Origin: Octopus sinensis
Taxonomy: Eukaryota
Length of the DNA stretch: 40,598 nucleotides
Direction of reading: 5' to 3'
Assembly: GCF_006345805.1 (NCBI RefSeq)
Contig: NW_021834217.1
Coordinates: 1 to 40,598 of the forward strand
The notes under the pieces were generated by a model. It had not been told where the DNA came from and ran no database searches. It worked only from the letters and a program-made list of their open reading frames with translations. A program made the position numbers and the translations under genes. Shown here one piece after another: positions 702 through 31,078 of the stretch (positions are counted from its first letter, which is position 1; every line of letters begins with the position of its first letter).

Positions 702-796
702 GAGCAGTTACTGTTTATATCTCGCTCAGAGATTTATTATTGTCATATATATATATATATAATAATATATGTATATGTGTGTATATATATATATAT

Positions 797-3472: not shown

Positions 3473-3539
3473 TGTGTTTACATATATATATATATATATA
3501 TACATGTGTATACATATGTCTACATGCATATACATATAT
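3296..3539. repeat. (TA)n/(TG)n compound microsatellite
   Basis: Directly visible. Confidence 0.95.
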
Positions 3540-4321
3540 CATCGTCATTTAATGTCCACTTTCTATGTTGGCATGGGTGGGACGGTCTGACAAGTCAGAT
3601 GGTTGCAACCGGTTTTAAGCCAATTTGGCAAAGTTTCAACAATTGGATGCCCTTCCTAATGCCAAACACTCCAAGAGTGTAGAGGGTGCTTTTTACATGC
3701 AACCAGCACAAGGGCTGGTCAGGCAGTACTGGTAACAACCATGTTTGAATGGTGCTTTTTACGTGCCACCGGCATGGGAGCGAGTGAGGTGGCACTGGCA
3801 ATGATCACTTTCAAATGGTGCTTTTTACGTGCCACCAGCATGGGACCAGTTAGCTGGCACTGGTATCAACCACCCTCAAATGCTGCTTTTTATGTCCCCC
3901 TGGCACAGGAGCCACTCAGGTTGTACTGTCATCAGCCACGACAATGAACTCACTTGCATGAACATGACCTTACAAGCGCAGTTTATTGCCTAATGATTGA
4001 AAGGCACTCTTAAATGGGCTGGTTATGCTGCACTGGCATAGGCCACGGTTATGGTCTCAGCTTGCTGTGGCTTCTCAAGCACAGGATATATCTGCAGAGG
4101 TCTCAGCCACTTGTCATTGTCTTGGTGAAGCCCAACGTTTGAAGGTCGTGCCTCACCACCTCATTCCAGGTCTTCCTGGGTCTACCTTTCCCACAGGTTA
4201 CCCCTACTACTAGGGTGTGATACTTTTTCACACAGCTGTCCTCATCCATACACAACAAATGACCATATCAGTGCAGTCGTCTCTCTTGCACACCACATCT
4301 GATGTTTCTTAAGTCCAACTT
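3540..4321 (-). mobile_element. Diverged 5'-truncated RTE LINE 3' fragment
   Basis: Minus strand encodes KLDLRNIRCGVQERRLH. 3'UTR repeats contain GTGCTTTTTACGTGCCACC and the terminal sequence resembles the other RTE copies. Confidence 0.88.
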
Positions 4322-9046: not shown

Positions 9047-10694
9047 CCTGAAAGTAGCACAATTTAGTAATTGGTCTGAAAGGGAAAATTAGACATACAT
9101 TAGTCAGCGGAACATTATAACAATACCGAATATATAATAACATTGAAAGTCGACATATTGTTTTAACTGTTGATGAGACACAAAAAATAATTTCAGTTTT
9201 GGAATCAGCAGAAAAAATAGATTGATAAACAATGAAAAAAATTCAATTAACAAATTTTTTTTGAAAATTGTTACATTGTGTAATTGATCTTTTTCTTCTT
9301 TCAATCAATGAAATATTTTTTTTAACTGATTTTGATTTTAATATTAAACTTTGTATATAAATGGAATTGTTCTGCTGATTTCATTTCTATTTTATATCTT
9401 GAAGCAAACAAAAAGAATTGTTTAAATATTAAACAATTTGGTGACAACATATATTTTCTCTCTCAGCACATTTTAATGTGCAATGCATTAAATATGTTTT
9501 CTCACCATCTTCAATATTATTTATCAGATGGATTGCTTCTGAGAATTACTTCATATTGTCTGCAATTATTATAAACTCTATTACAAACCAACAACAAAGT
9601 CTCAAAAAAACTCCTAAAAACATGTTAGATGATAACAACTTATGGGTGGGGTCATGGCTAGAAAGTCTGACCATAGGGTGATTAGATAAGAATTGATTTT
9701 TAGTTAAACATCAACAACAGAAGCCATAATTTTAATTTATTTTAAACAAATATATTTGTTACATTTCAAATGTAATGTTTATAAAAATAATTCTAATATT
9801 TCAACTTCATAAATTGTATTCTGACATTATAAAAGTTAAACATCCTATTAATTTAAAAAAGATTATAGTTTTGATATATTTTTATAAATTATATTTAAAT
9901 ATTGTATTTGAAGGAATAATCTATGTTATAATTTGGTAAATTTAGAAATATTCTTGGAGATTTCTGTGGAATTATCAGCTTGGTTGAGAAATAGAATAGT
10001 GATGGGTGTTTTTTTAAAGTGTAGATTTGTGGATGAGAAAGACATGAATAATAATTGAAGAGAGGGTGTGTCATTTATAGAGATAGGTTAACAGACTAAA
10101 TGGTGGTGGTCGTGGTGGTAGAAAGATTTCAAGTTATGAATGTAATGTGTGGCTGATGTGTTTTACTCCTTTAGTTTATTGAACACGGCCATGCTGGAGC
10201 ATTGCTTTTATGTATTTAACTGATTGTATTAGCACCAGCATTTCTTTTTAAGTCCGGTAAATATTTTAACCGAATCTATTTGTGGATCAGCTAAATTAGG
10301 AAATGGAGTTGATATTTTAATTAAACAGTAAGTACTAATGATTAAATGATGGAAAGAATATATATATATATAAAGTGAGAGAGAGAGAGATACACACTTG
10401 TATACATACATATATACGCACACTCTTCACATTTGTGCTAATTTCCTCCAACCATTTTATAAACTATAAAAAATGTGTCTAGGATTTCAAATACTTTTAC
10501 AAGAAGAGAAAGTTTATATTTTTTTGAACAATTTCAAAAATATTTGATGAATTCTATAGAAAGAAAATGTAAATTATATTTAATGACAAAAGGTTTTAGA
10601 TTTTATGTTTCATGGAAAATTCAAAGTTTGTAAATCAATTTTACAGAAATTTAAGATAAGAAATCAAATAGGTACGTAACTGTGTCTTTATTTT

Positions 10695-12494: not shown

Positions 12495-13421
12495 CATATG
12501 TCTGCACATGTCTCCTTGTCTTGACATCTGCTGCGAATTATAAACAAATTTCGCATCAAACAAACAGTCGTTTGTTTGCAGTGTTTCACCAGAAAACATA
12601 TCCAACCATTGTGCTGTTCATGTTGGAAGAACTTGGGGAAATATTGGTGAGCCTCATCGAGTGTAGTCATAGACTTGACTGAGTGGGACTCACAAGAACC
12701 TGGCAAGAAACAAAACAAAATTATTAGAAAGAAAATACAAAAAAGAAAATACATCATCTGATGTATTATAAAGGTTTTGACATCCATTTTCCCTAACTGG
12801 CATGGGGAGGACAGTTGACGAGGAAGCAGTGAACCAGAGGACATTGCTGAGCTCCAATGAAAGATTTGGCAAGATTTCTACAGCTGCATGATCTTCTTAA
12901 CACCAGATGCACACATACACGTGTGTGTATGTGTTTATACGTGCATAAGAGTATATGAATGAATAAACATGGGTTTACTTACGTTTGATTGCACATCTGA
13001 TTTTGTATGCTAGCATGGGTTAGGTGAATATATTATTGTAGCCTTGTTTTACAGACAGACAGCCTTCCTATTACTCACCCAAAACCATTTTGCAAGAACA
13101 AAAGTTCTTATTTCCCATGTCTTCCAAGGCGGGGGTGATTGGTTGACAGATGTTTCTGCTTGGAGCAACTTAAAAGAGATTGCAAACATAAACAAATGCA
13201 CAGACACCTACGTGCACACACACTCAGCTCGAGTTCACTGCTTCCTGTAGCAGAAACAGCTGGAAGCTAATGAAGGTGTCTACGTAACTCTTGTTCTTTT
13301 GTCATTCATTGATTCATATCTAAAAACATACATAGACACAAACATTTATACACGGGTATGTGAAGGTATATTCATATATTTACACATGTGCATTTATGTA
13401 TATGTGTATGTATGTATATAT

Positions 13422-14908
13422 CATCATCATCGTTTAACGTCCACTTTCCATGCTAGCATGGGTTGGACAATTTGACTGAAGGCTGGTGAACCAGATGGCT
13501 GCACCAGGCTTCAATCTTGATCTGGTAGAGTTTCTACAGCTGGATGCTTTTCCTAACGCCAACCCTTCCGAGAGTATAGTGGGTGCTTTTACATGCCACT
13601 GGCACGGGGCCAGTCACGCGATACTGGTAATGACCTTGCTCAAATCTTTTACACATGCCACCGGCACAGGTGCCAGTAAGGCAATGCTGGTAACTATCAA
13701 GCTCGAATGGCGACTTTTATGTGCCAACAGCACGGACGCCAGATAGCCGGTTGGCAACGGTCACGCTAGGATGGTGCTCTTAATACCCTACTAGTACAGG
13801 GCTCGAGTGCCAGTAAGGCGACGCTGGGAACGATCACAATCGAATGGTGCCTTTTAAGTGCCACTGGGACGGAAGTCAGTTAGCCGCTACGGACACTAGT
13901 CATCGAATTGGATTTTGATTTCACTTGCATCAACAGGTCTTCACAAGCAGAGTTTAAGTCGTCCAAAGAAGGAAAAGGTACGCATAAGTGGGCTGGTTAC
14001 GCCCCTGGCATAGGCCATGAGGTTATGGACACATTTGGTTTGCCGGGTCTTCTCACGCATGGCATATTTCCAAAAGTCGATGTCACTAGTCATTTCCTTG
14101 GTGAGGCCTAAAGTTTAAAGGTCGTGCTTCACCACTTCATCCCAGGTTTTCCTAGGTCTACCTCTTCCACTGGTTCCCACAACCACTATGGTGTGGCACT
14201 TTTTCACACAGCTATCCTCATCTATTCTTGTCACATGACCATACCAGCACAGTTGTCTCTCTTGCACACCACATCTGATGCTTCTTAGGTTCAACTTTTC
14301 TCTCAAGGTACTTACACTCTGTTGAGAACGCACACTGACATTACACATCCATTGGATCATACTGGCTTCATTCCTTGCGAGCTTACACCTGTCCTCAGCA
14401 GTCACATCCCATGTTTCACTGCCATGTAGCATGGCTGTTCGTACACATGCGTCATACAGTCAACTTTTTACTTTGAGTGAGAGGCCCTTTGTCACCAGCA
14501 GAAGTAAGAGCTCTCTGAACTTTGTCCAAGCTATTCTTATTCTAGCAGTTACATTTTCAGCGCACCCTCCCCCACTACAGACTTGGTCACCTAGATAATG
14601 GAAGCTATCAACTACTTCAAGTTTTTCTTCCTGGAATGTGGCGGAAGTTGTTCTCTGCGCATTTTCAGTGTTTATTGCACCCGAGCATCTACCACACACA
14701 AAAGCTATCTTCCCAGTTAGCCTTCCTTTGATATTACTGCACCTCTTATGTGTCCATAGCTTACACTGGGTACATCTTATAGAATTTTTACCTATGCCTC
14801 TACTACAGATCGAGCAGGGCCATCTACCTGAAGGGATTTGTGGTTTGCTTGCCTTCCCACTTATTAGGACTGTGGTTTTAGCTAGGTTGACTCTAAGGCC
14901 CTTTGATT
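13422..14908 (-). mobile_element. 5'-truncated RTE LINE with PHD-like finger, RT C-terminus and 3'UTR
   Basis: Minus ORFs 14460-14699 (CGRCSGAINTEN...KFRELL) and 14115-14432 (MLHGSETW...RWYGHV-like...GRGRPRKTW). (CAT)n tail at 13422. Confidence 0.93.
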
Positions 14909-14922
14909 ATATATATATATAT

Positions 14923-17843
14923 AGATTTAGAGACATGTTACTTGAAGCCTTCGACGAAATAGAAGGGGGCATAGCTACACATGGGGTAGAAGATAACTGG
15001 GCGCTTCTAAGGGACAACCTACTGAAAGCCACTGACCAGATCTGTGGCTGGTGCAAAGTCCCCACAAGACCCAAAATAACGTGGTGGTGGAACAATACTG
15101 TTGACAGGGCTATTAGACAAAAGAAACAGGCTTGGAAGGACTGGAAGAACGGTGGTAGCAGGGAAGTGTATCAGACTGCAAGAAAGGAAGCTAGGAGGCA
15201 GGTTTATTTAGCCAGAGGGGAAGCAGATAGGAAAAAATTTGCCAATGTCCTGCGCCGTGAGGATGAAAGACTTGAGGTATTTCGTATAGCAAGACAGTGT
15301 GTGAGTGAGAATCGTGACGTGGTAGGAGAAAAATGTGTTCGCACGGATGACGGCTCACTTGCGCTAAATGAGGATGCAAAGAGAGAGGTTTGGAGAAGCC
15401 ACTATGAAAGGTTGCTGAATGAGGAAAATGAATGGGATAAAGAGAGTCTGCCGAATGTTGACCCAACAGAGGGACCAGCAATCCGAGTTGACAGTTCCTT
15501 AGTAGTTAAGGCAATTAAAAGCATGAAAACAGGGAAAGCCCCAGGCCCATCAGGAATTACTGCAGAGATGCTCAAAATATCCTGTAGTGTCGGCTATAGC
15601 CTAGTCACCCGTATAGTTAACTAGGTGATACACGAAGGAGTCATTCCCAATGACTGGTGTAGCAGCATAATAGTCAGCTGCTACAAAGGTAAAGGTGACG
15701 CCCTAGATACAAATAACTACAGGGGTATCAAGCTGCTGGATCAGGTAATGAAGGTTACGGAGAGGGTTATAGCCCAACTAATTAGAGAGAGAGTTAGCCT
15801 AGATCAGATGCAGTTTGGGTTCGTGCCAGGGAAAAGTACTACTGATGCTATTTTCATGGTAAGACAGCTGCAGGAGAAATACCTAGCCAAAGACAAGCCC
15901 CTGTACCTGGCTTTTGTTGACATGGTGGTCAATGAGGAAACTAGGGATAGATGAATCGTTAGTGAAAGCTGTTCAAGCCATGTACAGAGACGCTGCTAGT
16001 AAGGTGAGGGTTGGCATCGAGTACAGTGAAGAATTCAGGATAGAGGTTGGGGTCCACCAAGGTTCAGTCCTCAGTCCCCTCCTATTTATCATAGTCCTCC
16101 AGGCAATAACAGAGGAATTCAAAACAGGATGCCCCTGGGAGCTCCTCTATGCTGATGACCTTGCTCTAATTGCTGAGTCTCTATCAGAACTAGAGGAGAG
16201 GTTTCAGGTATGGAAGCAAAGTTTAGAATCGAAGGGCCTTAGAATCAACCTAGCCAAAACCAAAGTCCTAATAAGTAGGAAGGTAGACCAATCACAAACG
16301 CCTTCAGGTAGATGGCCCTGCTCGATCTGTAGAAAAGGTGTAGGTAGAAACTCTATAAGATCCACCAAGTGTAAGCTATGGACACATAAGAGGTGCAGCA
16401 ATGTCAAAGGAAGGCTAACTAGGAAGATGGTTTTTGTATGTGGCAGATGCTCAGGAACAATAAACACTGAAAATGCTCTGAGACCAACTTCCGTCACTTT
16501 CCAGGGAGAAAAACTAGAAGTAGTTGATAGTTTCCGTTACCTAGGTGACCAAGTCAGTAGCGGGGGCGGATGTGCTGAAAGTATAACTGCTAGAGTAAGA
16601 ATAGCCTGGGCAAAGTTTAGAGAGCTCTTACCCCTGCTGGTGACAAAAGGCCTCTCGCACAGAGTGAAAGGCAGACTGTATGATGCGTGTGTACGTACAG
16701 CTATGCTACATGGTAGTGAAACATGGGCCGTGACTGCTGAGGACATGCGTAAGCTCGCGAGAAATGAAGCTAGTATGCTCCGATGGATGTGTAACGTCAG
16801 TGTTCATAATCGACAGAGTGTAAGTACCTTGAGAGAAAAGTTGGACCTAAGCAGCATCAGTTGTTGTGTGCAAGAGAGACGTTTGCGCTGGTATGGTCAT
16901 GTGATGAGAATGGCTGAAGATACTTGTGTGCGAAAGTGCCACACCCTGGCAGTTGAGGGGACCTGTGGAAGAGGTAGACCCAGGAAAACCTGGGTCGAGG
17001 TGGTGAAGCACGACCTTCGAACTTTAGGTCTCACCAAGGAAATGACTAGAGACCGAGACCTTTGGAAGTATGCTGTGCGTGAGAAACCCGGCAAGACCAG
17101 TGAGAACAGTCAAAATCAAAATCAAACCAAATTGAGGTCGATCAACATCAGGGCCCCCGTGCAGGTGACACGTAAAAGCACCATCCGTTCGTGGCCGTTT
17201 GCCAGCCCTGTCTGGCCCCCGTGTCGGTGGCACGTAAAAGCACCATCCGTTCGTGTTCGTTGCCAGCCTGGCCTGGCCCCCATGCCGGTGACACGTAAAA
17301 GCACCATCCGGTCGTGGCTGTTTGCCAGCTCTGTCTGGCCCCCGTGCAGGTGACACGTAAAAGCACCATCTGTTCATGGCCGTTTGCCAGCCCTGTCTGG
17401 CCCCCGTGTCGGTGGCATGTAAAAGCACCATCCGTTCGTGTTCGTTGCCAGCCTGGCCTGGCCCCCGTGCCGGTGACACGTAAAAGCACCATCCGTTCGT
17501 GGCTGTTTGTCAGCTCTGTCTGGCCCCCGTGCAGGTGACACGTAAAAGCACCATCCGTTCATGTCCGTTGCCAGCCTCGCCTGGCCCCGTGCCGGTGACA
17601 CGTAAAAGCACCATCCGTTCGTGGCCGTTTGCCAGCTCTGTCTGGCACCTGTGCGGGTGGCACATAAAAAGCACCCACTACACTCGCGGAGTGGTTGGCG
17701 TTAGGAAGGGCATCCAGCCGTAGAAACACTGCCAGATCTGACTGGGCCTGATGAAGCCTTCCAGCTTCACAGACCCCAGTTGAACCGTCCAACCCATGCT
17801 AGCATGGAGAACGGACGCTAAATGATGATGATGATGATGATGA
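14923..17843 (+). mobile_element. 5'-truncated RTE LINE (2.9 kb) with a disrupted reverse transcriptase ORF
   Basis: KAPGPSG, YKGKGD...NYRGIKLL, QFGFVPGKSTTDAIF, GVHQGSVLSPLLF, LLYADDL, YLG and WYGHV motifs. Premature TAG at 15622-15624, a deletion with frameshift near 15925, a 1-bp deletion near 17085, and a (TGA)n tail at 17823-17843. Confidence 0.96.
17155..17672 (+). repeat. About 61-bp minisatellite in the RTE 3'UTR with a 185-bp higher-order trimer
   Basis: AAAAGCACC recurs at about 17174, 17235, 17297, 17359, 17421, 17482, 17544, 17604 and 17667. Units 1-3 are re-copied as units 4-6. Confidence 0.92.
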
Positions 17844-18460: not shown

Positions 18461-19753
18461 ACATACAGACGTATGGATGTATAAATATACATATGTGCAT
18501 CCTTGTGTATATATTATACACGTTCATTCTATCATATATACATATATATGTATGTATATCCTGAAGAAGGTCTCTTTTATTTTTCATTCCTCCTGGGGTC
18601 AATAGAGTAACAGTCATTATTTCATAGACCAAGGAGGCGGTGGAGGATCATTCTGATGATGATGGGTCACCAGAATGTCATTAAACACCCCCACCAATAT
18701 TTCCTAATCCACCTCATTAAACCCCCAATACTTCATAATAAACTACACCAAGTTATAACTCCTCACCTGACACAAAACAAAACACACTTCACCTGCCAAA
18801 CCCTTTTTCATACAAACACATCTTTCTCATTGCTACCCAAACATTGTCCCTGAAATTAAAGATAATTAAGATGAACCTACCGTTCATTAATTGGACTTAT
18901 TCATTAACCAATCTTTATTATCTCAATCAGCAACAAATAATAACGATCCTCTCAACATGCTGTCTATCAGTGTGATTATATGAAAGCCCATCTTTGGATA
19001 AGCTTTCCCAGTTTAATCAATGTTGTGTATGATAATTGTGTGGATTATATTGAAATGTCGAGAGATTTACAGCATTTGTCAGGTTAAGAACAGTTTCGTC
19101 TCCAGCTATCTCTTAATCCAGGTAAATATGATGGAAACCAAGCCAACCATGACTGTCACATCATTTCCAGTGCATATAATTATTAGTAATACTTATAATC
19201 CTGATTGGTAGGGACGTGGTATTTTGTTATAAACTACTGTAAATTATATTAAATCGTTTTATAAGACAATACCACATTCAACTGTGTTAGCAGTGTTTTT
19301 CACATTATTCTACAGATATTCCATAGAAATTATAGCCGGCTCTGATTTTTTGCTAAAATGTTTCGTATCGAGATGTCAGATGTAAACAAACAACAGATGT
19401 TTTTGTCTTTGATCTCATTCTTTCCATCTGACATTTCAATATGAAATGTTGTAGCAGGAAATCAGTCCTGGCTATAATTTCTATCGATAATATCTGTAGA
19501 AATAACCTCAACAAAATACTTCCGTCTTACTCCAAAACTTTTCACCATCGCTTATATTCAGTCAATAAAGATAATGGTGTATTTATATCTTCAAGTTTTA
19601 TTTCTAATGATTATTCCATTGGAAACAGTTTAAATGTTTAACTTCACTGTCAAATAAACAATTTGTTTAATATATTTAATGAAATGTGTGTTTTCCTTGA
19701 AATTCTTTGAATGAATCAAGTAAATATTATTTTATCAAAAGCTTTTCACAAAA

Positions 19754-19779
19754 CTAATAAAGTTTTCATTTTATTTCAG
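19754..19779 (+). promoter_or_regulatory. Candidate branch point and 3' splice acceptor upstream of the large ORF
   Basis: CTAAT (19754-19758), then TTTTCATTTTATTTCAG ending at 19779. In-frame stops lie between the acceptor and ATG 19897. Confidence 0.45.
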
Positions 19780-19896
19780 CTTTCATGTAAAAATTAGTGA
19801 ATTTTGAAGAGATAAATTGTATTCCAAAGGAAGAAAACAAAATCCACAGAAAAGAATATATTTAACAGAAAAAGATAATAATTCTATATTCATAAA

Positions 19897-22800
19897 ATGG
19901 AGAAGATTAATGAAGAAAACAAAATGTTGGCTCTCATTCCAGCCACAGTCTGTGATACAACACCAATTCATAAGGAAACTACACCAATTCTTACCCAAAT
20001 ATTACATACACAAAACACAAAGAAAACAGAAGAACAGGAAAGAAAAGACACAAAGAAATCTAAAGAACAGGAAAAGTCCATGTTACCAAGTTTTCTTCAT
20101 ATTGTGACATGTTACCGAACACTAATCAAAACAGACCACATCAATACGTTTATAGATTATGTAAAGGATGAATGTAATCACATGGACTCTCTGGGTTTAA
20201 ATGGATCTCGAATTTTACGTAATATCAAGCGTAAAATGCCAAGATTTCTGGAATTTGCAGAACAAAATAATGATTTTGTTCACCAAAACCTTGATTGGTT
20301 TCAACAAAGACTCTTTGACATTTATGTCACCTGTAACCCATACAACCACAAGACCATTGAACCACCAAAAGTAACCACAAAATTTCGTCCTCTTCGGCCA
20401 GTTGTGACCAGAGAAGTAGAGATTGAGGAATCTGGTGAAGACTTAAGCAACCCAATATCCAATATTGTTGTCATACAAGGGGGTATTGTAACATATTCCC
20501 GCCACTGTATGACAATATGTTGTATAACAAGAGACAGCAACAGAAATGAAGTTCATTGCTCATCTTCTGTCACTGATTTTACTAGAATCAGTGAAGACAG
20601 AGTCCTGGCCACCCTGCCCTTCCGAAAAATGATTCTTATTATCAACCCTTTAAGTTTTAAAATCAAAAGAATTCAGCTAGGATTAATCTTGGTTTCCTAT
20701 TTGGAACATTCTACGCTTATAGGTGTAGAAATGTTTGGTCGGACCATATACGTCATTGACTGGGAAGAGAATAGAATAAAATACGAATTCATAACCAAAG
20801 AAACACCTTCAGATATTGCTGTAGGAGCACAAAACAAACTCTTAGTATCCTTTTCCAATATTAACAGGGTTACCTGTTACAATGTGGATGGCCAGCAGTT
20901 ATTTGAGGTGGATACCAATTCCCTGGACATTCCAAGCCACATCTCTGTCTACCAAAACCATTTTTATGTCCTTCAGGGACATATTATTTATCGGATATCA
21001 GGTACAGGTGCTGTGACAACAAGAGAAATTGGCATGAAATGCCGCCATATTTCTGTTGGCAGAGAAAACATTTTTGTAACCGATTATTTTGATGTCCTTC
21101 ATATCATTGGAACAAATGAAGACTTTTGGCCCAGGCAGTCATATAACCCCCAGCTATGGACCCCGACATTGAACAACTATATTTATATTGAGGATTGCTG
21201 CAATGTTACTAATATTCTACCTATGTCTACATCTTCTATATTAATATTCTACAGGAATAATAAAGCTATATTATTCACTGAGACTGGAGAAATAATTAAC
21301 CAAAATAATTCAACTTTCCTTGAGATTCCTTCTTGCTTTTGTAGAATGAATTCTAAAGGATTTCTGTTGTTTTACCGTGAAAACAAAGAATTTCAGTGTA
21401 TCACATGCCCTGGGCTAATGAAAGGCCCTTTAATGAAAGTCCATACTGATTACATTAAACTATGTCATGTTGTATCAAATAAGTGTTTAGCTCTAACCAC
21501 AAGTGGAAACAAAAGTGAGGTCCATATTCTATTGATCCACAAAGATAAAGTTGACATTGCAGAAAGAATTTCTCTGGGACATCATAATGTCAGCATTGCT
21601 GCAACTCCAATTAATTTTGTAGTCGTAGATGGAAACGAAAATAAAATGGTATTTTATTCCACATGTGGTGAAGAACTTTTTCAAAAATACCTTCCATTCT
21701 ATGGCTACCCTCATCACATCTACTCTGATAATGTTTATTTCTATGTCCTCTTCAGGAGACACTCTATTCTCAGATGTTACGATCTATATGGACAAATGAA
21801 ATGGCAGTGGGAACTGCCTTTCCCTGTTCACCCTCACATTGCTGTTTTCCAAGGAACCCTTTATGTCCCGGACACTCAACTCAACAGGGTTCTTCTTTAC
21901 AAGTATCAAGACCGGTCGTCTGGCTGCCTTTTACCCATTAAAAATCCTTATATCAGAAATCTAAATCTACGACTCAAAGAAAAGGAGAATGACCAAAAAC
22001 TTGTAATTGGCGAAATATGTAATCTGTCCAATGGACAGTTGGTGGTGTCTGACATCAAGCATGATTGTTTATTGTACATTTCTGAGGAAGGAGACATTGT
22101 GTCCAGATTACCTCTGCCGTCTACAGCCACAGATATATGTCGATGGGATTCTAATCATATAGGGGTCACATTACCCCTACAGAAACAATTAAGGGTCATC
22201 GGAAACCTATCAAAGACAGTGAGAAGTGTATCATTAAGGCAGCCTTATGTACGGGTGTGTAAGATGGGTGAATGTGAAATTGTTTGTTATTGTGATAAAC
22301 CATCACATTTTGACATTTTAGCCATCAATTATTATAATCAAGTCGAAGTAATTAAGACAATTAATATCCCTGTGTTTGTGAAATCATTATCAATAGACAA
22401 GAAAACAGAAAAGCTATTAATTGTTACTAGGGGAAAAGCTTTTCAGTACAACACTAGAATAGGTGGTGGTGGTCATGGCAGTGATGGTAGTATTAGTAGT
22501 GGTGATGGTAGTATTAGTAGTGGTGATGGTAGTATTAGTAGTAGTGATGGTATGGTTTCCAGTGATTCAGAGTCCGAAATAGAAGCTTTCTTCAAGCACA
22601 TTAGTGGTGGTGGTCATGGCGGTCGTCAGATGGTCCCCAGTGTTTTAATGTCCCAAGTGAAACGTCCCCTCAGTCTCCAAGGTGGATCTATTGACCAAAC
22701 GTCTGTTTATCTGATAGACAGAAGCCGTATGTTTGCCATAAACGATCAGAATTTGTTGGTTAATGATCTCGTTACTAATAATCAACTTAATTATTATATC

Positions 22801-25446
22801 GACCTGGTGGATGTATTTTCCAGACACATTTCTCTCAGTGAAATGTTGTCTTCCACTTTATATCTACAGGACCTGACAGTTTCTGATAAAGCCAGACATA
22901 TTCCTCTCCCTAAACATTTGGGAGACAAAGGACCAATGGAGATTAAACGTTTGGTTCTTACTGAAAATAATCTGATTGCAGGATGTGACTGGAAGAATGG
23001 AAACATTAAGATATTCACATTGGATGGTCAACTATTGGATTCAATCAAAGTGAATATTTATAGGAATATTAAAATGTGTCGATGGCAGTCAAACACACTG
23101 GTCATTACGATGAGGGATCTTTATGATTATAATAAACACCAACTGTTGACATTAAAAGTGGAATTTCCATTGTCGTTGGTAATTTACAAAACGAGAAATA
23201 ATTATTATGAATGTGTGGCTTCTTTATCAAACAATCAACTGGTTTTGAGTGAATGGAGAGATGGAAGACATTTGTATTTTGTTGATATTGATGAAATACA
23301 TTCGAGTGTGAAGGAAATAAAAAAAATAGACATACCTGAACCATTAATAAAGAGAGGCAGAAATGGAAATTATTCTGATATAATCCGGGATATTAAAGTT
23401 ACTGATGAAGATGTCATCATTGTCTTCAACGAAAGATTCATCATTTTCTTCAACAGTGGTGGTCAATATTTACATTCAGTCAGACACTACATGGTGAATT
23501 ATCATGGTGGTGGTGATGACAGGATGACAATTGATGACAGTTTTTTGTACATTTATGGTCAGTGGGAGAAATATTTAGGTTCATTTGGATATAAAAACAT
23601 TTTGTGTTTGACCCAGAATGGGGAATACAAGAGAATATTTTTAAATAAAAGAATTTATAAACATAGAGTAGAATTCTCCAGTATAGACTGTAAAGGACCA
23701 ATGTTTGTTGGAAGCCCCAGGAGGGAAGAAAGGAATGAATTGTATGTTGAAGGGTTGTTTATGGTGAATCGAGACAGCTTCCCGGTTGCTCGTTTACAAA
23801 CAGACAAATGTCCTGTTCAAGTAAAAGATTTTGATGTCTCTGAGGAAGGAAAGACAGTTGTGTGTGAAAAAGCCAATAATGGAAATGTTAAAATATTCGA
23901 TGAAGACGGCCAGTTGCTATGTCACAGAAATGTTGCAAGTTTAGTTGGTGGTGTGTGTTTTACACAAGAATCACACATAATGGCCACGGTTCCTAAAAGG
24001 AAAGAAATATTTCAACTGAATGGAGAAGATTTGCAGACATCTCAAGTTTGGTCGAGTCTCATCCCTTATGGTGTAATATGGAGAAAAGTGGCGGGTATTT
24101 ACTGGTGTGTACATAATGAATTGATTGAATGTCATTGCATAAAGATTGATGGGGACCAAGTGAACATTCTGGAATCTGTGTCGTTATTAAATCTTGATTC
24201 TTGTCTTCGTTTCCCTTCCATTACATCTGAAACGAACAAGGAAATATTCAGTAATGAATTAATTAATAAATTGGAATACAGAGGCGGAGATGGAGATGGA
24301 GGAGGAAGAAGAAGAGGTAAATCAGGTGAAATAATTGGTAAAGGTAGATTAAAGGTGAGATGTGGTAATTACATAGCGGAGATTAATAATTCAGGAATTG
24401 ATGAAATATCAGTGAGGAGACTTCCATATAGGACAGCAATGGTCTCTTTTTCCATTCCTGCATTTGAGGAACCTGTTGATTATGATTTTAGGGACATTAG
24501 GGACCGGAACAGTAAACTAATTAAGTTAGATGAGAATGTGAGTGTGTTGATGTTTCGAGAAAGTGTCACATTAATCAGAACAACAACAACAACAGTGGAC
24601 ATACTTCAACATGAACAACAACAACGACCACCACTGGACATATGTCGGTGGACAGAGGAATGTTTCATTGTCGCCTTTGGGAGAGAAATGAGGGTCTTCA
24701 ACAGGGATCTCCGTCGTTTAAAAACCATCAGAACTGAGAAATATTACAACAGGATTTATAAATACAACGACAATCAACTCGTGTGTGGTGGTCATTATAT
24801 TAGAGACATAACTCAAGAAGAGAGACACAAGAAATACAAAAGAAAATGGAGAAACAACAAGTATTGCTATTATTGCAAAGACCCCGACATCTGTGACCCT
24901 TTTTATGTGGATGTGGTTGATATCAAAGATGGGAAATGTAAAGATGAAGTGTGTCGTGGGAAGATGTGGAGATGGGGAAGGATGGAGGGAGATGAAGGGG
25001 TGGAAGATGTGGGAGTCACATCTTTTGGTGATGTTTTTGTTGTGAGGAGGGAGTGGAAGATGAACAAGTCTGGAAGATTGGAAGATTTTTGTTTTGTGGA
25101 ATGGTCCAGGGAAAAGTCTTTGGTGAGGAGGATAAGAATAGAAAGAGAAATATTTTATGGTCTGGAATTTTATGTTGTAAGACCTCGTCTGACCATAATT
25201 GGTGAATGTGTTTATATAACAGATTTAAGAAACAATATTTACGAAATACCTCGACATATTGAAGAGGAAACATCTGAAGATGATGAAATCCTGAGATTAA
25301 AAGATAATCCAAAATATTTACTCCTCAGTGAGGATTATAATGAAGTCTCTGAAGTTCTTGGTTTGGATGTTTCAGACAATTCTTTGATGGTTTTTGGAAT
25401 TATTCCTGGACGTCAATCTTTTGCTTTCTTTTATTTTGACAAATAA
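19897..25446 (+). CDS. Uncharacterised 1849-aa single-exon protein: N-terminal helical module plus about six tandem NHL/SGL-like beta-propellers
   Basis: Uninterrupted 5.55 kb ORF in 35-40% GC, repeat-saturated DNA. Recurring blocks such as IGEICNLSNGQLVVSD...DICRWDSNHIGVTLP, GNIKIFTLDGQLL...MCRWQSN, GNVKIFDEDGQLL...VCFTQE and LDICRWTEECFIV resemble the propeller of molluscan TRIM-like proteins. Confidence 0.9.
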   Translation: MEKINEENKMLALIPATVCDTTPIHKETTPILTQILHTQNTKKTEEQERKDTKKSKEQEKSMLPSFLHIVTCYRTLIKTDHINTFIDYVKDECNHMDSLGLNGSRILRNIKRKMPRFLEFAEQNNDFVHQNLDWFQQRLFDIYVTCNPYNHKTIEPPKVTTKFRPLRPVVTREVEIEESGEDLSNPISNIVVIQGGIVTYSRHCMTICCITRDSNRNEVHCSSSVTDFTRISEDRVLATLPFRKMILIINPLSFKIKRIQLGLILVSYLEHSTLIGVEMFGRTIYVIDWEENRIKYEFITKETPSDIAVGAQNKLLVSFSNINRVTCYNVDGQQLFEVDTNSLDIPSHISVYQNHFYVLQGHIIYRISGTGAVTTREIGMKCRHISVGRENIFVTDYFDVLHIIGTNEDFWPRQSYNPQLWTPTLNNYIYIEDCCNVTNILPMSTSSILIFYRNNKAILFTETGEIINQNNSTFLEIPSCFCRMNSKGFLLFYRENKEFQCITCPGLMKGPLMKVHTDYIKLCHVVSNKCLALTTSGNKSEVHILLIHKDKVDIAERISLGHHNVSIAATPINFVVVDGNENKMVFYSTCGEELFQKYLPFYGYPHHIYSDNVYFYVLFRRHSILRCYDLYGQMKWQWELPFPVHPHIAVFQGTLYVPDTQLNRVLLYKYQDRSSGCLLPIKNPYIRNLNLRLKEKENDQKLVIGEICNLSNGQLVVSDIKHDCLLYISEEGDIVSRLPLPSTATDICRWDSNHIGVTLPLQKQLRVIGNLSKTVRSVSLRQPYVRVCKMGECEIVCYCDKPSHFDILAINYYNQVEVIKTINIPVFVKSLSIDKKTEKLLIVTRGKAFQYNTRIGGGGHGSDGSISSGDGSISSGDGSISSSDGMVSSDSESEIEAFFKHISGGGHGGRQMVPSVLMSQVKRPLSLQGGSIDQTSVYLIDRSRMFAINDQNLLVNDLVTNNQLNYYIDLVDVFSRHISLSEMLSSTLYLQDLTVSDKARHIPLPKHLGDKGPMEIKRLVLTENNLIAGCDWKNGNIKIFTLDGQLLDSIKVNIYRNIKMCRWQSNTLVITMRDLYDYNKHQLLTLKVEFPLSLVIYKTRNNYYECVASLSNNQLVLSEWRDGRHLYFVDIDEIHSSVKEIKKIDIPEPLIKRGRNGNYSDIIRDIKVTDEDVIIVFNERFIIFFNSGGQYLHSVRHYMVNYHGGGDDRMTIDDSFLYIYGQWEKYLGSFGYKNILCLTQNGEYKRIFLNKRIYKHRVEFSSIDCKGPMFVGSPRREERNELYVEGLFMVNRDSFPVARLQTDKCPVQVKDFDVSEEGKTVVCEKANNGNVKIFDEDGQLLCHRNVASLVGGVCFTQESHIMATVPKRKEIFQLNGEDLQTSQVWSSLIPYGVIWRKVAGIYWCVHNELIECHCIKIDGDQVNILESVSLLNLDSCLRFPSITSETNKEIFSNELINKLEYRGGDGDGGGRRRGKSGEIIGKGRLKVRCGNYIAEINNSGIDEISVRRLPYRTAMVSFSIPAFEEPVDYDFRDIRDRNSKLIKLDENVSVLMFRESVTLIRTTTTTVDILQHEQQQRPPLDICRWTEECFIVAFGREMRVFNRDLRRLKTIRTEKYYNRIYKYNDNQLVCGGHYIRDITQEERHKKYKRKWRNNKYCYYCKDPDICDPFYVDVVDIKDGKCKDEVCRGKMWRWGRMEGDEGVEDVGVTSFGDVFVVRREWKMNKSGRLEDFCFVEWSREKSLVRRIRIEREIFYGLEFYVVRPRLTIIGECVYITDLRNNIYEIPRHIEEETSEDDEILRLKDNPKYLLLSEDYNEVSEVLGLDVSDNSLMVFGIIPGRQSFAFFYFDK
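22480..22551 (+). repeat. In-frame 21-bp tandem repeat encoding (G/S)DGSISS
   Basis: Three full units at 22480-22542 plus a partial fourth. Confidence 0.95.
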
Positions 25447-25865
25447 ATATTTCCAGAAATATTAAACTTCAATCTTCTTCTTCTTCTTCTTCTTCTTCTT
25501 CTTGTTGATGTAAATGGCTTCGCCCGGGAATCGAACCTGCATCGCATACATTGCATTCTACACACTAACTCTTATTGTTGTAACATTTCTCAACACTCTC
25601 TCTTTGTGTGTGAGTGTATATTTATATACAGTATATATACTTGTGTTTATATATATATACACACATATTTAGGAACGTATGTATAGAAATAAGGCTAGAA
25701 GTATGTATGTTTGTGTGTGTGTATATACGCATGTATATATATATATTATATATATATATACGCATGCATGTATGTATAGGAATGTCTGGTCGGAAACCAG
25801 AGACTTTCATAATCATTGATTCTCCATTAAAAGGCAGACGACCAACAACAACAACAGCAGACGAC

Positions 25866-25941
25866 AACCGCCACCGCCTCCATCACCACCACCACCGCCA
25901 CCTGCATCATCATCGTCATCATCATCACCACCGCCATCATC

Positions 25942-25972
<31 letters not shown>

Positions 25973-25983
25973 TCGTCGTCATC
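25866..25983. repeat. (CAT/CAC/CGT)n trinucleotide microsatellite
   Basis: Directly visible; it produces the poly-His ORF 25614-26018. Confidence 0.9.
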
Positions 25984-26726
25984 AGTGTCGTGTGTGCGTG
26001 TGTGCAGTCTGCATCTGACTTTTTATAATGTTTAATAAGAATAGATTGTTGTTGTTGTTGTTGCAGTGAAATTCCAACTGCACACACGCACAAACATTGC
26101 CTTTCGTCCTCGTAGGGTTGTTGTTGTTGTTGCTGTTAGGGGTTCATACAAAAGAGAAGGACACTTTAAGAAGCATTCAGTAAAAGCTTTCCCATAGCTG
26201 GTCATTTTTTATGCTAGAAATAGAAACCACTTTATTTTTCATATAAATTTTGAAGGACAGATAAGAAGCATTCATAAATAAAATTGACCTGTATATGGTC
26301 TCATTTCATGCTAGAAAGAGCCACCTAAACCTTCACGTGAAAGTTGTGAGAAAGCAAATTCGGCATAGCTACAGATGTATACCCCACCGACTTTGTTTCC
26401 TCATAACTTGCAGAAAAATGGATATGTTTTGAAGGAAACTTTCAACAAATAATCGCTTAGATCCTATAGATTGAGTTTTTGTAAGGATTTGTTGGAAAAA
26501 CATTTTCTGAAGGGTTGCGGAAAGGAGTTTCGCAAAATTCACACAACCAGACATTTTCCCTCCTCATAAATTTCAGGAAAATGGGTATTTTTGAATGAAA
26601 TTTTATAGAAATAACTTTCAAACGATGTAGATTATGATTAAAAAGAAATTTGTTGGCAAAATGTTTTGTAAGAGGTCGAGGGAAAATGTGTGTGATTTAA
26701 GGGAGATTTGGCTGTTGTTTTTAGCA

Positions 26727-30039: not shown

Positions 30040-31078
30040 AATAATAATAATAATAATAATAATAATTGTGTACAGTGCTCAGGTGCACTACAACTCATCT
30101 AAAGTGTATATATAATCAGGTGAAGTTTCGGCGGATTTCGGAAAGCATGAGGGCCTTAAAAGATGCAGTGTCATGGCAGTCAACAACTGACGCAGGCAGT
30201 TTATTCCATGCTTCAGCAACTCTGAGCGTGAAAAAATGTTTCCGAAAGTCATGGGAGCTGTATTGTTTTCTGACTTTGTCGGCATGTCCACGTGTGTTAG
30301 ACACATGGAGATCAAAAAGGTGTTCAGTGTTGTTGTTGGTGAGGTGGTTGATAACTTTGTGGGTGTTTACCAAGTCCGTCGCCAACGCCGGAGCTTCAGT
30401 GAATCCATGCCCAGGGAAACAAGGCGCTCAGATATGGTAGGTGTCTGATGGAGGGTATGCGTTTGGTTGCACGTCTCTGGACAGATTCCAGGAGGTCAAT
30501 GTTCTGTGCAAGATAGGTTCCAAACTGATGATGCGAATTCCAAGTGTGGTCGTACCATAGCTGTATACAGTTTTAAATAGATGGCTGGAGAGCGGCTAAC
30601 AAAAGACCTGCTGAGTGATGCCAAGACACCCTCGGCCTTCCTGACAATCTTAGAGATATGCTTTGACCAACGCAAATCACTGCTGACAGTGATGCCTAGG
30701 TCACGCTCGCAAGAGGATTTCTTGATATCAGTGTTGTGGAGGGAGTATATGAACGCAGGGTTTTTTCCCCCAAAATGCATGGTGGTACACTTGTCCACAG
30801 CCAGTTTCAGTTGCCAGTCTGTGATCCATTGCTGCATTGTGTCTAGGTCTGATTGCAGGAAAGAGTTGTAGACATCAGGATCTGTCCTCTTGATTTCAAG
30901 GTACAGCTTGATGTCGTCTGCATATTTCAATACTGTGGCATTCTTTAAATTGGCATCTATGTCGTTAATGTATGCCACAAACAAGAGGGGACCAAGGACA
31001 GATCCCTGTGGTACACCCGATGACATCTCATATGGTGTAGAGTGCTGTCCTAGAACTGTGACTACCTCCTTTCGGCTT
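30040..31078 (-). mobile_element. 5'-truncated CR1-clade LINE with RT fragment
   Basis: SGVPQGSVLGPLLF, LKYADDIKLY, ERDLGITV, VRPHLEFASSVW and RKHFFTLRVAEAWNKLP motifs. (ATT)n tail at 30040-30066. Confidence 0.93.

What the first reader, a model, noticed from the sequence alone, without database searches (positions are those of the whole stretch)
19897..25446. Giant intronless protein built from about six tandem divergent beta-propellers
A conserved motif recurs every 690-940 nt: FTRISEDRVLATLP (about 20578), FCRMNS (about 21338), ICRWDSNHIGVTLP (about 22135), MCRWQS (about 23074), VCFTQE (about 23953) and ICRWTE (about 24640). Most copies are preceded by a 'KIF..DGQLL'-type strand. Molluscan TRIM-like proteins usually carry one such propeller after a B-box/coiled-coil, whereas here no RING or B-box is visible and the propeller is multiplied about six times. 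An unbroken 5.5-kb ORF in TE-saturated DNA implies selection. A multivalent RNA-, glycan- or protein-binding scaffold, possibly immune, is a hypothesis only.
Basis: partly seen in the sequence, partly recalled or inferred. Interest (0 to 1): 0.75.

Follow-up and report, generated by a model that had tools for sequence, protein, structure and literature searches.

The report
Octopus giant multi-propeller protein family
This is an intact gene for a 1849-residue octopus protein made of six diverged copies of the beta-propeller found at the end of cephalopod TRIM-like proteins; it belongs to an undescribed, octopod-only, clustered gene family in which two propeller regions evolve under diversifying selection, the pattern expected of a recognition or defence protein.

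Summary
Plain self-BLAST sees no repeat. A profile of cephalopod/bivalve TRIM-like C-terminal propellers, however, matches six separate regions of the family profile (E 1e-21 to 3e-5). AlphaFold2 gives confident all-beta, four-strand-blade domains, and Foldseek returns only multi-propeller proteins. Four units are whole propellers and two (C, F) are half-units. No RING, B-box, signal peptide or membrane segment is present. Relatives are about 42 database clusters in Octopus vulgaris, O. sinensis and O. bimaculoides, plus two Argonauta proteins with the same architecture. All are unnamed, and 22 clusters lie on one O. vulgaris chromosome. Frameshifted copies and mosaic dS indicate gene birth-and-death and gene conversion. 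Units A-D and F are under purifying selection (pN/pS 0.25-0.53). Unit E (1.98, p=0.002) and the C-terminal region H (3.50, p=6e-5) are under diversifying selection, and in E the changes fall in loops. My best reading is an intracellular recognition scaffold with two variable specificity modules, probably engaged in a host-parasite conflict. The function is inferred, not shown. It is a new variant of a known kind.

The parts
19897..25446 (+). Complete single-exon coding sequence, 1849 aa plus stop
   Evidence: One search shows the ORF. Searches show 89% aa and 95% nt identity to O. vulgaris P0001 (locus L001), which is annotated as a single exon.
19897..20448 (+). N-terminal region, aa 1-184. 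About 50 residues are disordered, then come three helices (aa 52-145) predicted at low confidence. This is the most divergent part of the family.
   Evidence: pLDDT 25-63; mean pairwise identity 0.36, and no match to the TRIM coiled-coil (4.8% probability); only 4 Cys and 7 His in aa 1-170, so no zinc-finger pattern.
20449..21126 (+). Unit A, aa 185-410: conserved propeller carrying the motif FTRISEDRVLATLP
   Evidence: about 21 strands, pLDDT about 86; 86-93% probability against the TRIM-like propeller profile; pN/pS 0.37, p(deficit) 4e-11.
21199..21906 (+). Unit B, aa 435-670: conserved six-bladed propeller carrying the motif FCRMNS
   Evidence: 24 strands, pLDDT about 86; 85-95% probability, 171 columns; pN/pS 0.53; dS is raised in aa 377-601, which marks a gene-conversion mosaic.
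22009..22461 (+). Unit C, aa 705-855: half-propeller of about 3.5 blades carrying the motif ICRWDSNHIGVTLP. It is one of the most conserved units.
   Evidence: 14 strands, pLDDT about 75; 96-97% probability, but only to columns 24-157 of the 284-column propeller profile. C vs G 94.6% probability; pN/pS 0.32.
22462..22668 (+). Gly/Ser-rich disordered linker, aa 856-924. It contains a 21-nt coding tandem repeat at 22481-22552 (GDGSISS x3.4) and varies in length between paralogues.
   Evidence: (family D4) show the repeat. One search gives pLDDT below 50. Searches show a 51-residue indel relative to P0001.
22669..22890 (+). Segment D, aa 925-998: conserved, but with no detectable repeat homology and a low-confidence fold
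   Evidence: no match; pLDDT below 50; mean identity 0.73; pN/pS 0.25.
22891..23754 (+). Unit E, aa 999-1286: complete six-bladed NHL-like propeller carrying the motif MCRWQS. It is hypervariable and under diversifying selection.
   Evidence: 24 strands, pLDDT 73-93; 99.4-99.5% probability, E 1e-21 to 3.5e-23, against the whole TRIM-like propeller; 95.5% probability against Sepia P0064; pN/pS 1.98, p=0.002; 46% of loop positions vary against 20% of strand positions, Fisher 3e-6.
23755..24186 (+). Unit F, aa 1287-1430: highly conserved half-unit carrying NVKIFDEDGQLL and VCFTQE. Its fold was predicted at low confidence when modelled without unit C.
   Evidence: 74-82% probability, to columns 42-179 only; pLDDT 31-58; mean identity 0.70, 24% invariant columns; pN/pS 0.34.
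24187..24420 (+). Second linker, aa 1431-1508, with a Gly/Arg-rich patch (RGGDGDGGGRRRGKSG)
   Evidence: pLDDT below 50. One search shows the sequence.
24421..25443 (+). Unit G+H, aa 1509-1849: C-terminal propeller of 6-7 blades carrying the motif ICRWTE. Its second half (H, aa 1641-1849, nt 24817-25443) is hypervariable.
   Evidence: pLDDT 62-94; 97.5% probability, E 6e-12, 206 columns. G pN/pS 0.83; H pN/pS 3.50, p=6e-5; pairwise dN/dS in H is 1.7-9.2.
18558..19896 (+). Upstream flank duplicated together with the gene; presumably the promoter and 5' UTR. It contains a 70-nt-arm hairpin at 19320-19389/19418-19487.
   Evidence: collinear at 89-96% with loci L001, L002 and L003, and from 19265 onward with L005 and L006. 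(I2) show the hairpin.
25447..26336 (+). Downstream flank duplicated together with the gene; presumably the 3' UTR. It contains (TCT)10 and an imperfect (CAT)27 tract.
   Evidence: every O. vulgaris and O. sinensis paralogue locus sampled aligns up to window 26336. One search shows the repeats.

Best explanation
The ORF is a functional member of an undescribed gene family restricted to octopods (Octopus and Argonauta). Shown: the protein is soluble, with no signal peptide and no membrane segment. It consists of a variable helical N-terminus followed by six units homologous to the six-bladed, NHL-like beta-propeller that ends cephalopod and bivalve TRIM-like proteins (RING, B-box, coiled coil, propeller). 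Four units are whole propellers (A, B, E, G+H) and two are half-units (C, F). The RING and B-box are gone. Also shown: the family grew by segmental and tandem duplication, mostly on one chromosome, with gene conversion and pseudogenisation. Units A-D and F are held by purifying selection. Unit E and the C-terminal region H accumulate amino-acid changes faster than silent changes, and in E those changes fall in loops. Inferred: the conserved propellers form a structural or effector-binding core. E and G+H are interchangeable specificity modules that bind a rapidly changing ligand, most likely a protein or RNA of a virus, a transposon or another intracellular parasite. On this reading the family acts as an intracellular recognition or restriction scaffold, analogous to the variable C-terminal domains of antiviral TRIMs. 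Having no RING of its own, it would have to work by sequestration or by recruiting another effector. I am about 0.9 confident in the structural and evolutionary part and about 0.4 in the defence function.
For: ORF and motifs. Family membership and distribution. Argonauta P0045 is 38.5% identical over aa 43-1560, with the same architecture. Six-fold homology to the TRIM-like propeller: (E 1e-21, G+H 6e-12, C 2e-9, A 5e-6, B 7e-6, F 3e-5). The relatives carry RING, B-box and NHL Pfam domains. Fold. No RING or B-box. No membrane segment or signal peptide. Clustering, shared flanks and pseudogene copies. Selection: sliding windows; all pairs; counts and binomial tests; loop enrichment in E. One search shows E and H as old divergent cassettes (pS 0.53-0.66) inside otherwise homogenised genes (pS 0.09-0.17). 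Contrast in rate: the divergent paralogue P0046 is 93.9% identical between O. vulgaris and O. bimaculoides, whereas the window protein's best O. bimaculoides match is 66-69%. Context from the literature: the NHL-like C-terminus of TRIM56 binds RNA and restricts viruses (PMC6623546, PMC11768893), and TRIM genes fall into a conserved group and a fast-evolving group (PMC2533329).
Against: No expression, localisation or ligand data could be obtained. No Pfam domain passes threshold, so the NHL assignment rests on profile-profile homology to weakly NHL-positive relatives. The AlphaFold alignments are shallow (43 closely related sequences) and mean pLDDT is only 66-67. Units C, D and F are unresolved. 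The dN/dS tests use simple Nei-Gojobori counting on a minimum-spanning tree, not a recombination-aware codon model, and the family clearly recombines. In the older paralogue group the ratio in E and H is 0.6, not above 1. Diversifying selection also fits non-immune conflicts, such as reproduction. Without a RING the protein has no evident effector activity.
Confidence: 0.45

Rival explanations
1. The architecture is the same, but the conflict is not with parasites. The variable propellers would mediate species- or individual-specific protein recognition in reproduction (sperm-egg or seminal interactions) or in another tissue-specific octopod innovation, and the diversifying selection would come from sexual conflict or rapid co-evolution with an endogenous partner.
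For: Diversifying selection limited to two modules and rapid gene turnover are also typical of reproductive proteins. Nothing in the sequence is specifically immune. Octopod-only distribution fits a lineage-specific novelty.
Against: The protein has no signal peptide or membrane segment, so an extracellular gamete-recognition role is unlikely. The nearest relatives are TRIM-like cytoplasmic proteins. Dozens of copies with cassette-like old variants resemble defence repertoires more than reproductive genes.
Confidence: 0.2
2. It is a housekeeping-type multi-propeller scaffold, for example a substrate adaptor or hub for a ubiquitin ligase or an RNA-regulatory complex, working like DDB1 or like TRIM-NHL translational repressors. 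The expansion and variability would then reflect sub-functionalisation rather than an arms race.
For: Foldseek matches include DDB1 and other assembly hubs. NHL propellers of TRIM-NHL proteins bind RNA (established knowledge of Brat and LIN-41/TRIM71). A slowly evolving paralogue exists (P0046/P0081, 93.9% identical between species) that could have such a role.
Against: Housekeeping hubs are single-copy and conserved across animals, whereas this family is octopod-only. pN/pS above 1 in E and H and a whole-gene dN/dS of 0.78-0.89 among close copies are not the behaviour of a core scaffold.
Confidence: 0.15
3. It is a selfish or effectively neutral multicopy element. On this reading the ORFs are intact only because the copies are young, and the apparent dN/dS above 1 is an artefact of relaxed constraint, misalignment or gene conversion.
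For: There are many copies, in both orientations, amid transposon debris. Frameshifted copies exist. Whole-gene dN/dS is near 0.8 among close copies. There is no recognised domain.
Against: About 5% nucleotide divergence over 5.5 kb would be expected to introduce several stops if the sequence were neutral (my estimate), yet eight sampled copies of 5.3-5.6 kb are all open. pN/pS is significantly below 1 in five regions, down to p=4e-11. Misalignment or relaxed constraint drives the ratio towards 1, not to 2-3.5. The architecture is kept in Argonauta at 38% identity. There is no reverse transcriptase, integrase or transposase domain and no LTR or TIR around the unit. The shared flanks are ragged, as in segmental duplication.
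Confidence: 0.08

Closest known systems
TRIM-NHL and TRIM-like proteins (RING, B-box, coiled coil, six-bladed NHL propeller; for example TRIM2/3/32/71, Brat, and TRIM56 with its NHL-like C-terminus). The closest here are the cephalopod TRIM-like proteins P0064 (Sepia/Acanthosepion pharaonis), P0071 (Argonauta hians), P0067 and P0072.
   Same: Each of the six units is homologous to the C-terminal propeller of these proteins (E 1e-21 for unit E). They share the hallmark 'vKvFsfdGql...l...P.GiC.W....vVTlP....i.f'. Unit E is predicted with 24 strands, which is six blades. The proteins are cytoplasmic and soluble.
   Different: There is no RING, no B-box and no detectable TRIM coiled coil. There are six propeller units instead of one. 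Pfam NHL is not detected in the octopus protein itself. The family is restricted to octopods, and two units are hypervariable.
Fast-evolving antiviral TRIM repertoires (primate TRIM5/TRIM22; fish finTRIM with a variable B30.2 domain). This comparison comes from general knowledge, plus PMC2533329 for the two evolutionary classes of TRIM genes.
   Same: It is a clustered, lineage-specific multigene expansion. Diversifying selection is concentrated in loops of the C-terminal recognition domain while the rest is conserved. There is gene conversion and pseudogene turnover.
   Different: The recognition domain here is a propeller, not B30.2/SPRY. The E3-ligase part is absent. The recognition domain is multiplied within a single chain.
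Multi-propeller scaffolds: DDB1 (three propellers), LRP4/5/6 and LRP2 (YWTD propellers), IFT-A subunits, Utp21/WDR36
   Same: These are the best structural matches. Several beta-propellers sit in one polypeptide and act as an interaction platform.
   Different: Sequence identity is about 10% and there is no sequence-level homology. They belong to different propeller classes (WD40, YWTD). They are conserved, mostly single-copy genes found across eukaryotes.
Octopus lineage-specific clustered expansions (protocadherins and C2H2 zinc fingers; general knowledge of the O. bimaculoides genome paper, not verified here)
   Same: They show the same genomic style: large tandem or segmental arrays with mostly single large coding exons. 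A C2H2 zinc-finger gene lies next to paralogue P0002.
   Different: The protein fold is unrelated. This family has not, as far as I could find, been described.

Membership tests
TRIM / TRIM-NHL family | N-terminal RING finger | tested here: not met
   No RING Pfam hit in the window protein or in 17 relatives. Only 4 Cys and 7 His in aa 1-170.
TRIM / TRIM-NHL family | B-box zinc finger(s) | tested here: not met
   No B-box hit, whereas the related TRIM-like proteins P0064, P0067, P0069 and P0072 do hit it.
TRIM / TRIM-NHL family | Coiled coil following the B-box | tested here: inconclusive
   Helices at aa 52-145 are predicted at low pLDDT. There is no profile match to the pre-propeller region of the TRIM-like relatives (4.8% probability).
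TRIM / TRIM-NHL family | C-terminal six-bladed NHL-type beta-propeller | tested here: met
   Unit E aligns to the whole propeller of TRIM-like relatives (99.4% probability, E 1e-21). Those relatives carry Pfam NHL repeats. AlphaFold2 gives 24 strands, which is six blades. Caveat: Pfam NHL does not hit the octopus protein directly.
Beta-propeller fold (generic) | Repeated four-stranded antiparallel blades that give propeller matches in a fold search | tested here: met
   DSSP strand patterns. Foldseek PDB top hits are all propeller proteins, E down to 2e-21. The viral library gives an NHL-repeat protein with TM 0.68.
WD40-repeat proteins | WD40 sequence repeats (Pfam PF00400 and its clan) | tested here: not met
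   Only sub-threshold hits: WDR90 propeller E 0.073, ANAPC4_WD40 in 1 of 18 members. Bacterial WD40 proteins appear only at E about 1e-5 and over about 60 residues.
Octopod multi-propeller family (unnamed; P0001-P0046, Argonauta P0045/P0079) | Full-length collinear homology with the same order of six units | tested here: met
   41-95% identity over 92-100% of the length to many Octopus proteins. 38.5% over aa 43-1560, plus the C-terminus, to Argonauta P0045. 32% over aa 162-1632 to P0046.
Transposable-element or virus-encoded protein | Reverse transcriptase, integrase, transposase or capsid domain, and terminal repeats (LTR or TIR) bounding the copy | tested here: not met
   No such domain in the ORF. 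No LTR or TIR around 17.7-27.7 kb. Paralogue flanks are shared over ragged, variable lengths. The viral fold library gives only generic propellers.
Secreted or membrane immune receptor (lectin-like propellers, for example tectonins and tachylectins) | Signal peptide or transmembrane segment | tested here: not met
   The N-terminus is charged and polar. The maximum Kyte-Doolittle 19-residue mean is 1.38, and that stretch lies inside a propeller strand. No dedicated signal-peptide predictor was available.

The most novel reading that the evidence does not exclude
Octopods have evolved a previously unrecognised class of intracellular innate-immune (antiviral or anti-transposon) recognition proteins. 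A TRIM-like NHL propeller was multiplied six-fold into one chain and lost its E3-ligase head. The family then diversified into dozens of clustered genes. Two propellers serve as hypervariable, cassette-like specificity modules, and they are shuffled between paralogues by gene conversion while the remaining propellers are homogenised.
Probability: 0.3. Interest if true: 0.8.

Novelty: new variant of a known kind. Interest (0 to 1): 0.6.

Why it matters
To my knowledge, cephalopod immune recognition is poorly understood and no diversified receptor repertoire has been described (not verified here beyond the searches). This family offers a concrete candidate. It is large, clustered and octopod-specific, and it descends from a domain (the TRIM C-terminal propeller) that other animals use for RNA binding and virus restriction. 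It has a clear modular split between conserved scaffold units and two units under diversifying selection. It is also an unusual case of protein evolution: a single propeller domain was multiplied six-fold within one exon and the catalytic head was then lost. It also shows concerted evolution and cassette-like preservation of old variants operating side by side in the same gene. Even if the function turns out not to be immune, the family is a clean, testable example of a lineage-specific gene innovation in octopods. It has so far been annotated only as 'hypothetical protein'.

Tried and rejected
1. Self-BLASTP of the protein found no internal repeat. Profile methods were needed.

2. Pfam on the protein and on 18 family members found nothing above threshold. 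The weak hits (DUF5711, DUF4934, SGL, WDR90) only hint at propellers.

3. A PDB sequence search found nothing.

4. A second word-indexed homologue search with the family profile added only one more Octopus cluster.

5. I tested whether the N-terminal helices are a remnant TRIM coiled coil. No support was found.

6. I tested the transposon or virus origin. There are no transposon domains, no LTR or TIR, and only generic propellers in the viral fold library. Rejected.

7. I asked whether the window is identical to, or the strict orthologue of, a database copy. It is not. It is roughly equidistant (dS 0.05-0.07) from P0001 and P0002, which are themselves 0.047 apart. It is therefore a recent paralogue or a copy from a closely related genome.

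8. Per-unit net charge and pI, as a hint of RNA binding, were uninformative.

9. Literature searches by LOC identifiers and by cephalopod, octopus, TRIM and NHL terms found no description of the family.

10. Replicating the dN/dS>1 result in a second paralogue group (P0010, P0012, P0013) did not give a ratio above 1. There, E and H are saturated old cassettes with a ratio of 0.6. This qualifies the positive-selection claim to the recent duplicates.
Full report
**Observation**

Window 19897-25446 (+) is a single ORF of 1849 codons with an ATG start. It is the only ORF of 150 aa or more in that stretch. The next longest ORF in the whole 40.6-kb window is 479 aa. The region is 34-39% G+C, where stop codons are frequent, so an open frame of this length cannot be chance.

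Self-BLASTP finds no internal repeat at E<=10, so the periodicity is not obvious similarity and needed a sensitive test.

**What the protein is related to**

- Pfam gives nothing above threshold, only weak propeller-type hints. The PDB sequence search gives nothing.
- A search of 5.8 billion proteins returns 41 clusters, all from Octopus vulgaris, O. sinensis and O. bimaculoides. All are named 'uncharacterized' or 'hypothetical', at 41-95% identity and mostly full length. A profile search adds one more cluster.
- 22 of the 42 clusters lie on one 29.19-Mb O. vulgaris chromosome, OX597841.1. Sampled copies sit at 9.57, 10.30, 21.88-21.93, 22.03 and 22.66 Mb.
- An exhaustive HMMER search with a 1138-position family profile (aa 185-1384) against 1.84 billion representative proteins finds 26 proteins at E<=1e-10. 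All those I looked up belong to the family:
  - Octopus species, including many fragmentary gene models;
  - Argonauta hians (P0045 and P0079, 1913-1925 aa);
  - a divergent paralogue, P0046/P0080/P0081, located on a different, large chromosome.
- Argonauta P0045 is 38.5% identical to the window protein over aa 43-1560, and 31% over the C-terminus, so it has the same architecture. P0046 is 32% identical to the window protein but 93.9% identical between O. vulgaris and O. bimaculoides. The family therefore predates the Octopus-Argonauta split and contains both a slow branch and a fast, expanded branch.
- No squid, cuttlefish, Nautilus or other animal has a multi-propeller relative in this library.

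**The repeat and its origin**

- Outside the family, the next-best hits (E 4e-9 to 7e-4) include generic bacterial WD40 proteins, but those with a recognisable domain head are TRIM-like: a Sepia (Acanthosepion) pharaonis protein with RING, B-box and NHL hits (P0064); unnamed proteins from public read assemblies with RING/B-box and/or NHL hits (P0065, P0067, P0070, P0072); and a bivalve B-box protein (P0069). An Argonauta protein with no Pfam hit (P0071) also aligns.
- The family profile aligns to the C-terminal 290 residues of P0064 at 95.5% probability, E 1.6e-8.
- I built a profile of eight such TRIM-like propellers (284 columns) and compared it with the family profile. It matches six separate regions:
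  - unit E, 99.4%, E 1e-21, covering the whole propeller;
  - unit G+H, 97.5%, E 6e-12;
  - unit C, 96.3%, E 2e-9, covering columns 24-157 only;
  - unit A, 86%;
  - unit B, 85%;
  - unit F, 74%, covering columns 42-179 only.
That motif corresponds to the 'P.GiC.W....vVTlP' strand pair of the TRIM-like propeller, preceded by 'vKvFsfdGql'.
- Family segments also match each other: C vs G 94.6%, E 6.5e-8; C vs E 77%.
- The N-terminal 165 residues and segment D (aa 925-998) match nothing.
The refinement is that four units are complete and two are half-length.

**Structure**

- AlphaFold2 on aa 1-880 (43-sequence alignment; mean pLDDT 66.8) gives a disordered start, three low-confidence helices (aa 52-145), and all-beta domains at aa 185-410 and 435-670 (pLDDT about 86) and at 705-855 (about 75). 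The strand counts are about 21, 24 and 14.
- The model of aa 925-1849 (mean pLDDT 66.0, pTM 0.67) gives confident all-beta domains at aa 999-1286 (24 strands, which is six blades) and at aa 1509-1849. Confidence is low for aa 925-997 and 1287-1508.
- Foldseek against the PDB returns only multi-propeller proteins: IFT-A subunits, LRP4/LRP2, Utp21, DDB1 and axonemal WD proteins, at E 2e-21 to 1e-11 and about 10% identity. The viral library returns generic propellers, including an NHL-repeat protein at TM 0.68.
- Unit F is the most conserved unit in sequence but was poorly predicted, and unit C is only 3.5 blades. I had split these two between the two jobs. It is possible that C, D and F assemble together with E as an insertion.
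- There is no membrane segment and no signal-peptide-like N-terminus, so the protein is most likely intracellular.

**Genomic behaviour**

- The window is collinear with the P0001 locus of O. vulgaris (L001) at 89-97% in the flanks and about 95% in the CDS. Other paralogue loci share the 0.6-1.9 kb upstream and the 0.9 kb downstream of the ORF.
- The shared flanks end raggedly and are interrupted by retroelement insertions. No LTR or TIR bounds the unit. This is segmental duplication, not transposition.
- Frameshifted copies lie beside intact ones (L003 3903-9061, L002 20137-22944).
- Only one copy lies in the window itself.
- In P0010, P0012 and P0013 the large exon encodes all but the first 2-7 residues.

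**Selection**

- Whole-gene dN/dS is 0.78-0.89 among the close copies (dS about 0.05) and about 0.6 against an O. bimaculoides copy.
- The average hides a sharp mosaic. I counted changes on per-codon minimum-spanning trees across five close copies and obtained these pN/pS values:

| Region | pN/pS | p-value |
|---|---|---|
| A | 0.37 | 4e-11 (deficit) |
| B | 0.53 | 4e-3 (deficit) |
| C | 0.32 | 8e-4 (deficit) |
| D | 0.25 | 5e-3 (deficit) |
| F | 0.34 | 0.03 (deficit) |
| E | 1.98 | 2e-3 (excess) |
| H | 3.50 | 6e-5 (excess) |

- In E, 46% of loop positions vary against 20% of strand positions (Fisher 3e-6). In H the enrichment is not significant.
- dS also jumps locally: 0.22-0.28 in aa 377-601 against 0.02-0.09 elsewhere, and about 0.8 in unit A of P0003. 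This shows exchange between paralogues.
- In the older trio P0010, P0012 and P0013, E and H carry pS 0.53-0.66 and pN 0.32-0.42, while the rest of the gene has pS 0.09-0.17. The conserved units are therefore homogenised, and E and H persist as old, divergent cassettes. The ratio there is 0.6, so the excess of replacements is a feature of the recent duplicates.
- Across 18 family members, mean identity is lowest in the N-terminus (0.36), H (0.47) and E (0.55), and highest in C, D and F (0.70-0.73).

**Interpretation**

Shown: this is an intact, selectively maintained member of an octopod-only family of soluble proteins. They are built from six TRIM-like, NHL-type propeller units without a RING or B-box. 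The family is expanding and turning over in clusters, and it combines conserved scaffold units with two hypervariable units.

Inferred: E and G+H are specificity modules that bind a fast-changing ligand, and the conserved units hold the assembly or bind an effector. Cytoplasmic location, descent from TRIM-type recognition domains, clustered expansion, cassette-like variants and loop-focused diversifying selection together point most strongly to intracellular recognition of parasites (viruses or transposons).

Rivals are a reproductive or other endogenous co-evolution role, a sub-functionalised housekeeping scaffold, and a near-neutral multicopy element. The last is contradicted by the strong purifying selection on five regions, by eight open 5.3-5.6 kb ORFs, and by conservation in Argonauta.

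**Novelty**

I found no publication on the family, and every database name is 'hypothetical' or 'uncharacterized'. The fold and the parent domain are known. The six-fold tandem architecture, the loss of the TRIM head, the octopod restriction and the two-module hypervariability are new. I classify it as a new variant of a known kind.

Noticed in passing
window 17152-17675: A G+C-rich tandem array with a 62-bp unit, 8.5 copies (also readable as 123 or 185 bp). Related copies lie at window 784-1113 (-), 3538-3844 (-) and 13420-13872 (-), and in paralogue locus L002. It is probably the internal repeat of a dispersed element that lies next to a reverse-transcriptase fragment.
   Followed up: partly
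window 15914-17353 (+) and 30496-31026 (-): ORFs with partial reverse-transcriptase domains (RVT_1, E 6e-15 and 4e-16), which are retroelement remnants. The block at about 13.4-18.5 kb is absent from the otherwise collinear O. vulgaris locus L001, so it is an insertion specific to this copy.
   Followed up: partly
window 19320-19389 / 19418-19487: An inverted repeat with 70-nt arms (80% complementary, 28-nt spacer) about 410 bp upstream of the start codon. It also aligns to the paralogue locus L001 (positions 9378-9600). It could be a MITE-like insertion or a regulatory hairpin.
   Followed up: no
window 22481-22552: A 21-nt tandem repeat inside the coding sequence (GDGSISS x3.4) in the Gly/Ser linker. 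The linker differs by 51 residues between the window protein and P0001, and is different again in P0002, P0033 and P0036. It is a length-hypervariable disordered hinge.
   Followed up: partly
window 21025-21700 (aa 377-601); also unit A of paralogue P0003 (L005): Synonymous divergence jumps locally: dS 0.22-0.28 here against 0.02-0.09 in the neighbouring regions, and dS about 0.8 in unit A of P0003. These are mosaic genes produced by gene conversion or recombination between paralogues.
   Followed up: partly
L003 3903-9061 (-) and L002 20137-22944 (+): Frameshifted, partial copies of the family lie beside intact genes. One is partly annotated as a 411-aa gene. Another overlaps a C2H2 zinc-finger gene model, and some database 'fusion' proteins (P0009 with zinc fingers, P0014 with DUF4371) probably arise from such mis-joined models.
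   Followed up: partly
P0046 (O. vulgaris), P0080 (O. sinensis), P0081 (O. bimaculoides): A divergent family member on a different, about 200-Mb chromosome is 93.9% identical between O. vulgaris and O. bimaculoides, yet only 32% identical to the window protein. It is a slowly evolving branch, apparently one copy per species, that may retain the ancestral function.
   Followed up: partly
window 25473-25503 and 25905-25984: (TCT)10 lies immediately after the stop codon, and an imperfect (CAT)27 / His-Asp-like triplet tract lies in the 3' flank. The flank itself aligns in the paralogue loci.
   Followed up: no
P0033, P0035, P0027, P0045: Some paralogues carry long acidic or low-complexity repeat insertions: 'ESEDQI(S/F)' repeats before the last blades in P0033 and P0035, a poly-Asp insert in unit E of P0027, and 'ADNTRMV' and 'TPPLQQ' repeats in Argonauta P0045. 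The loops and linkers evidently tolerate large insertions.
   Followed up: no
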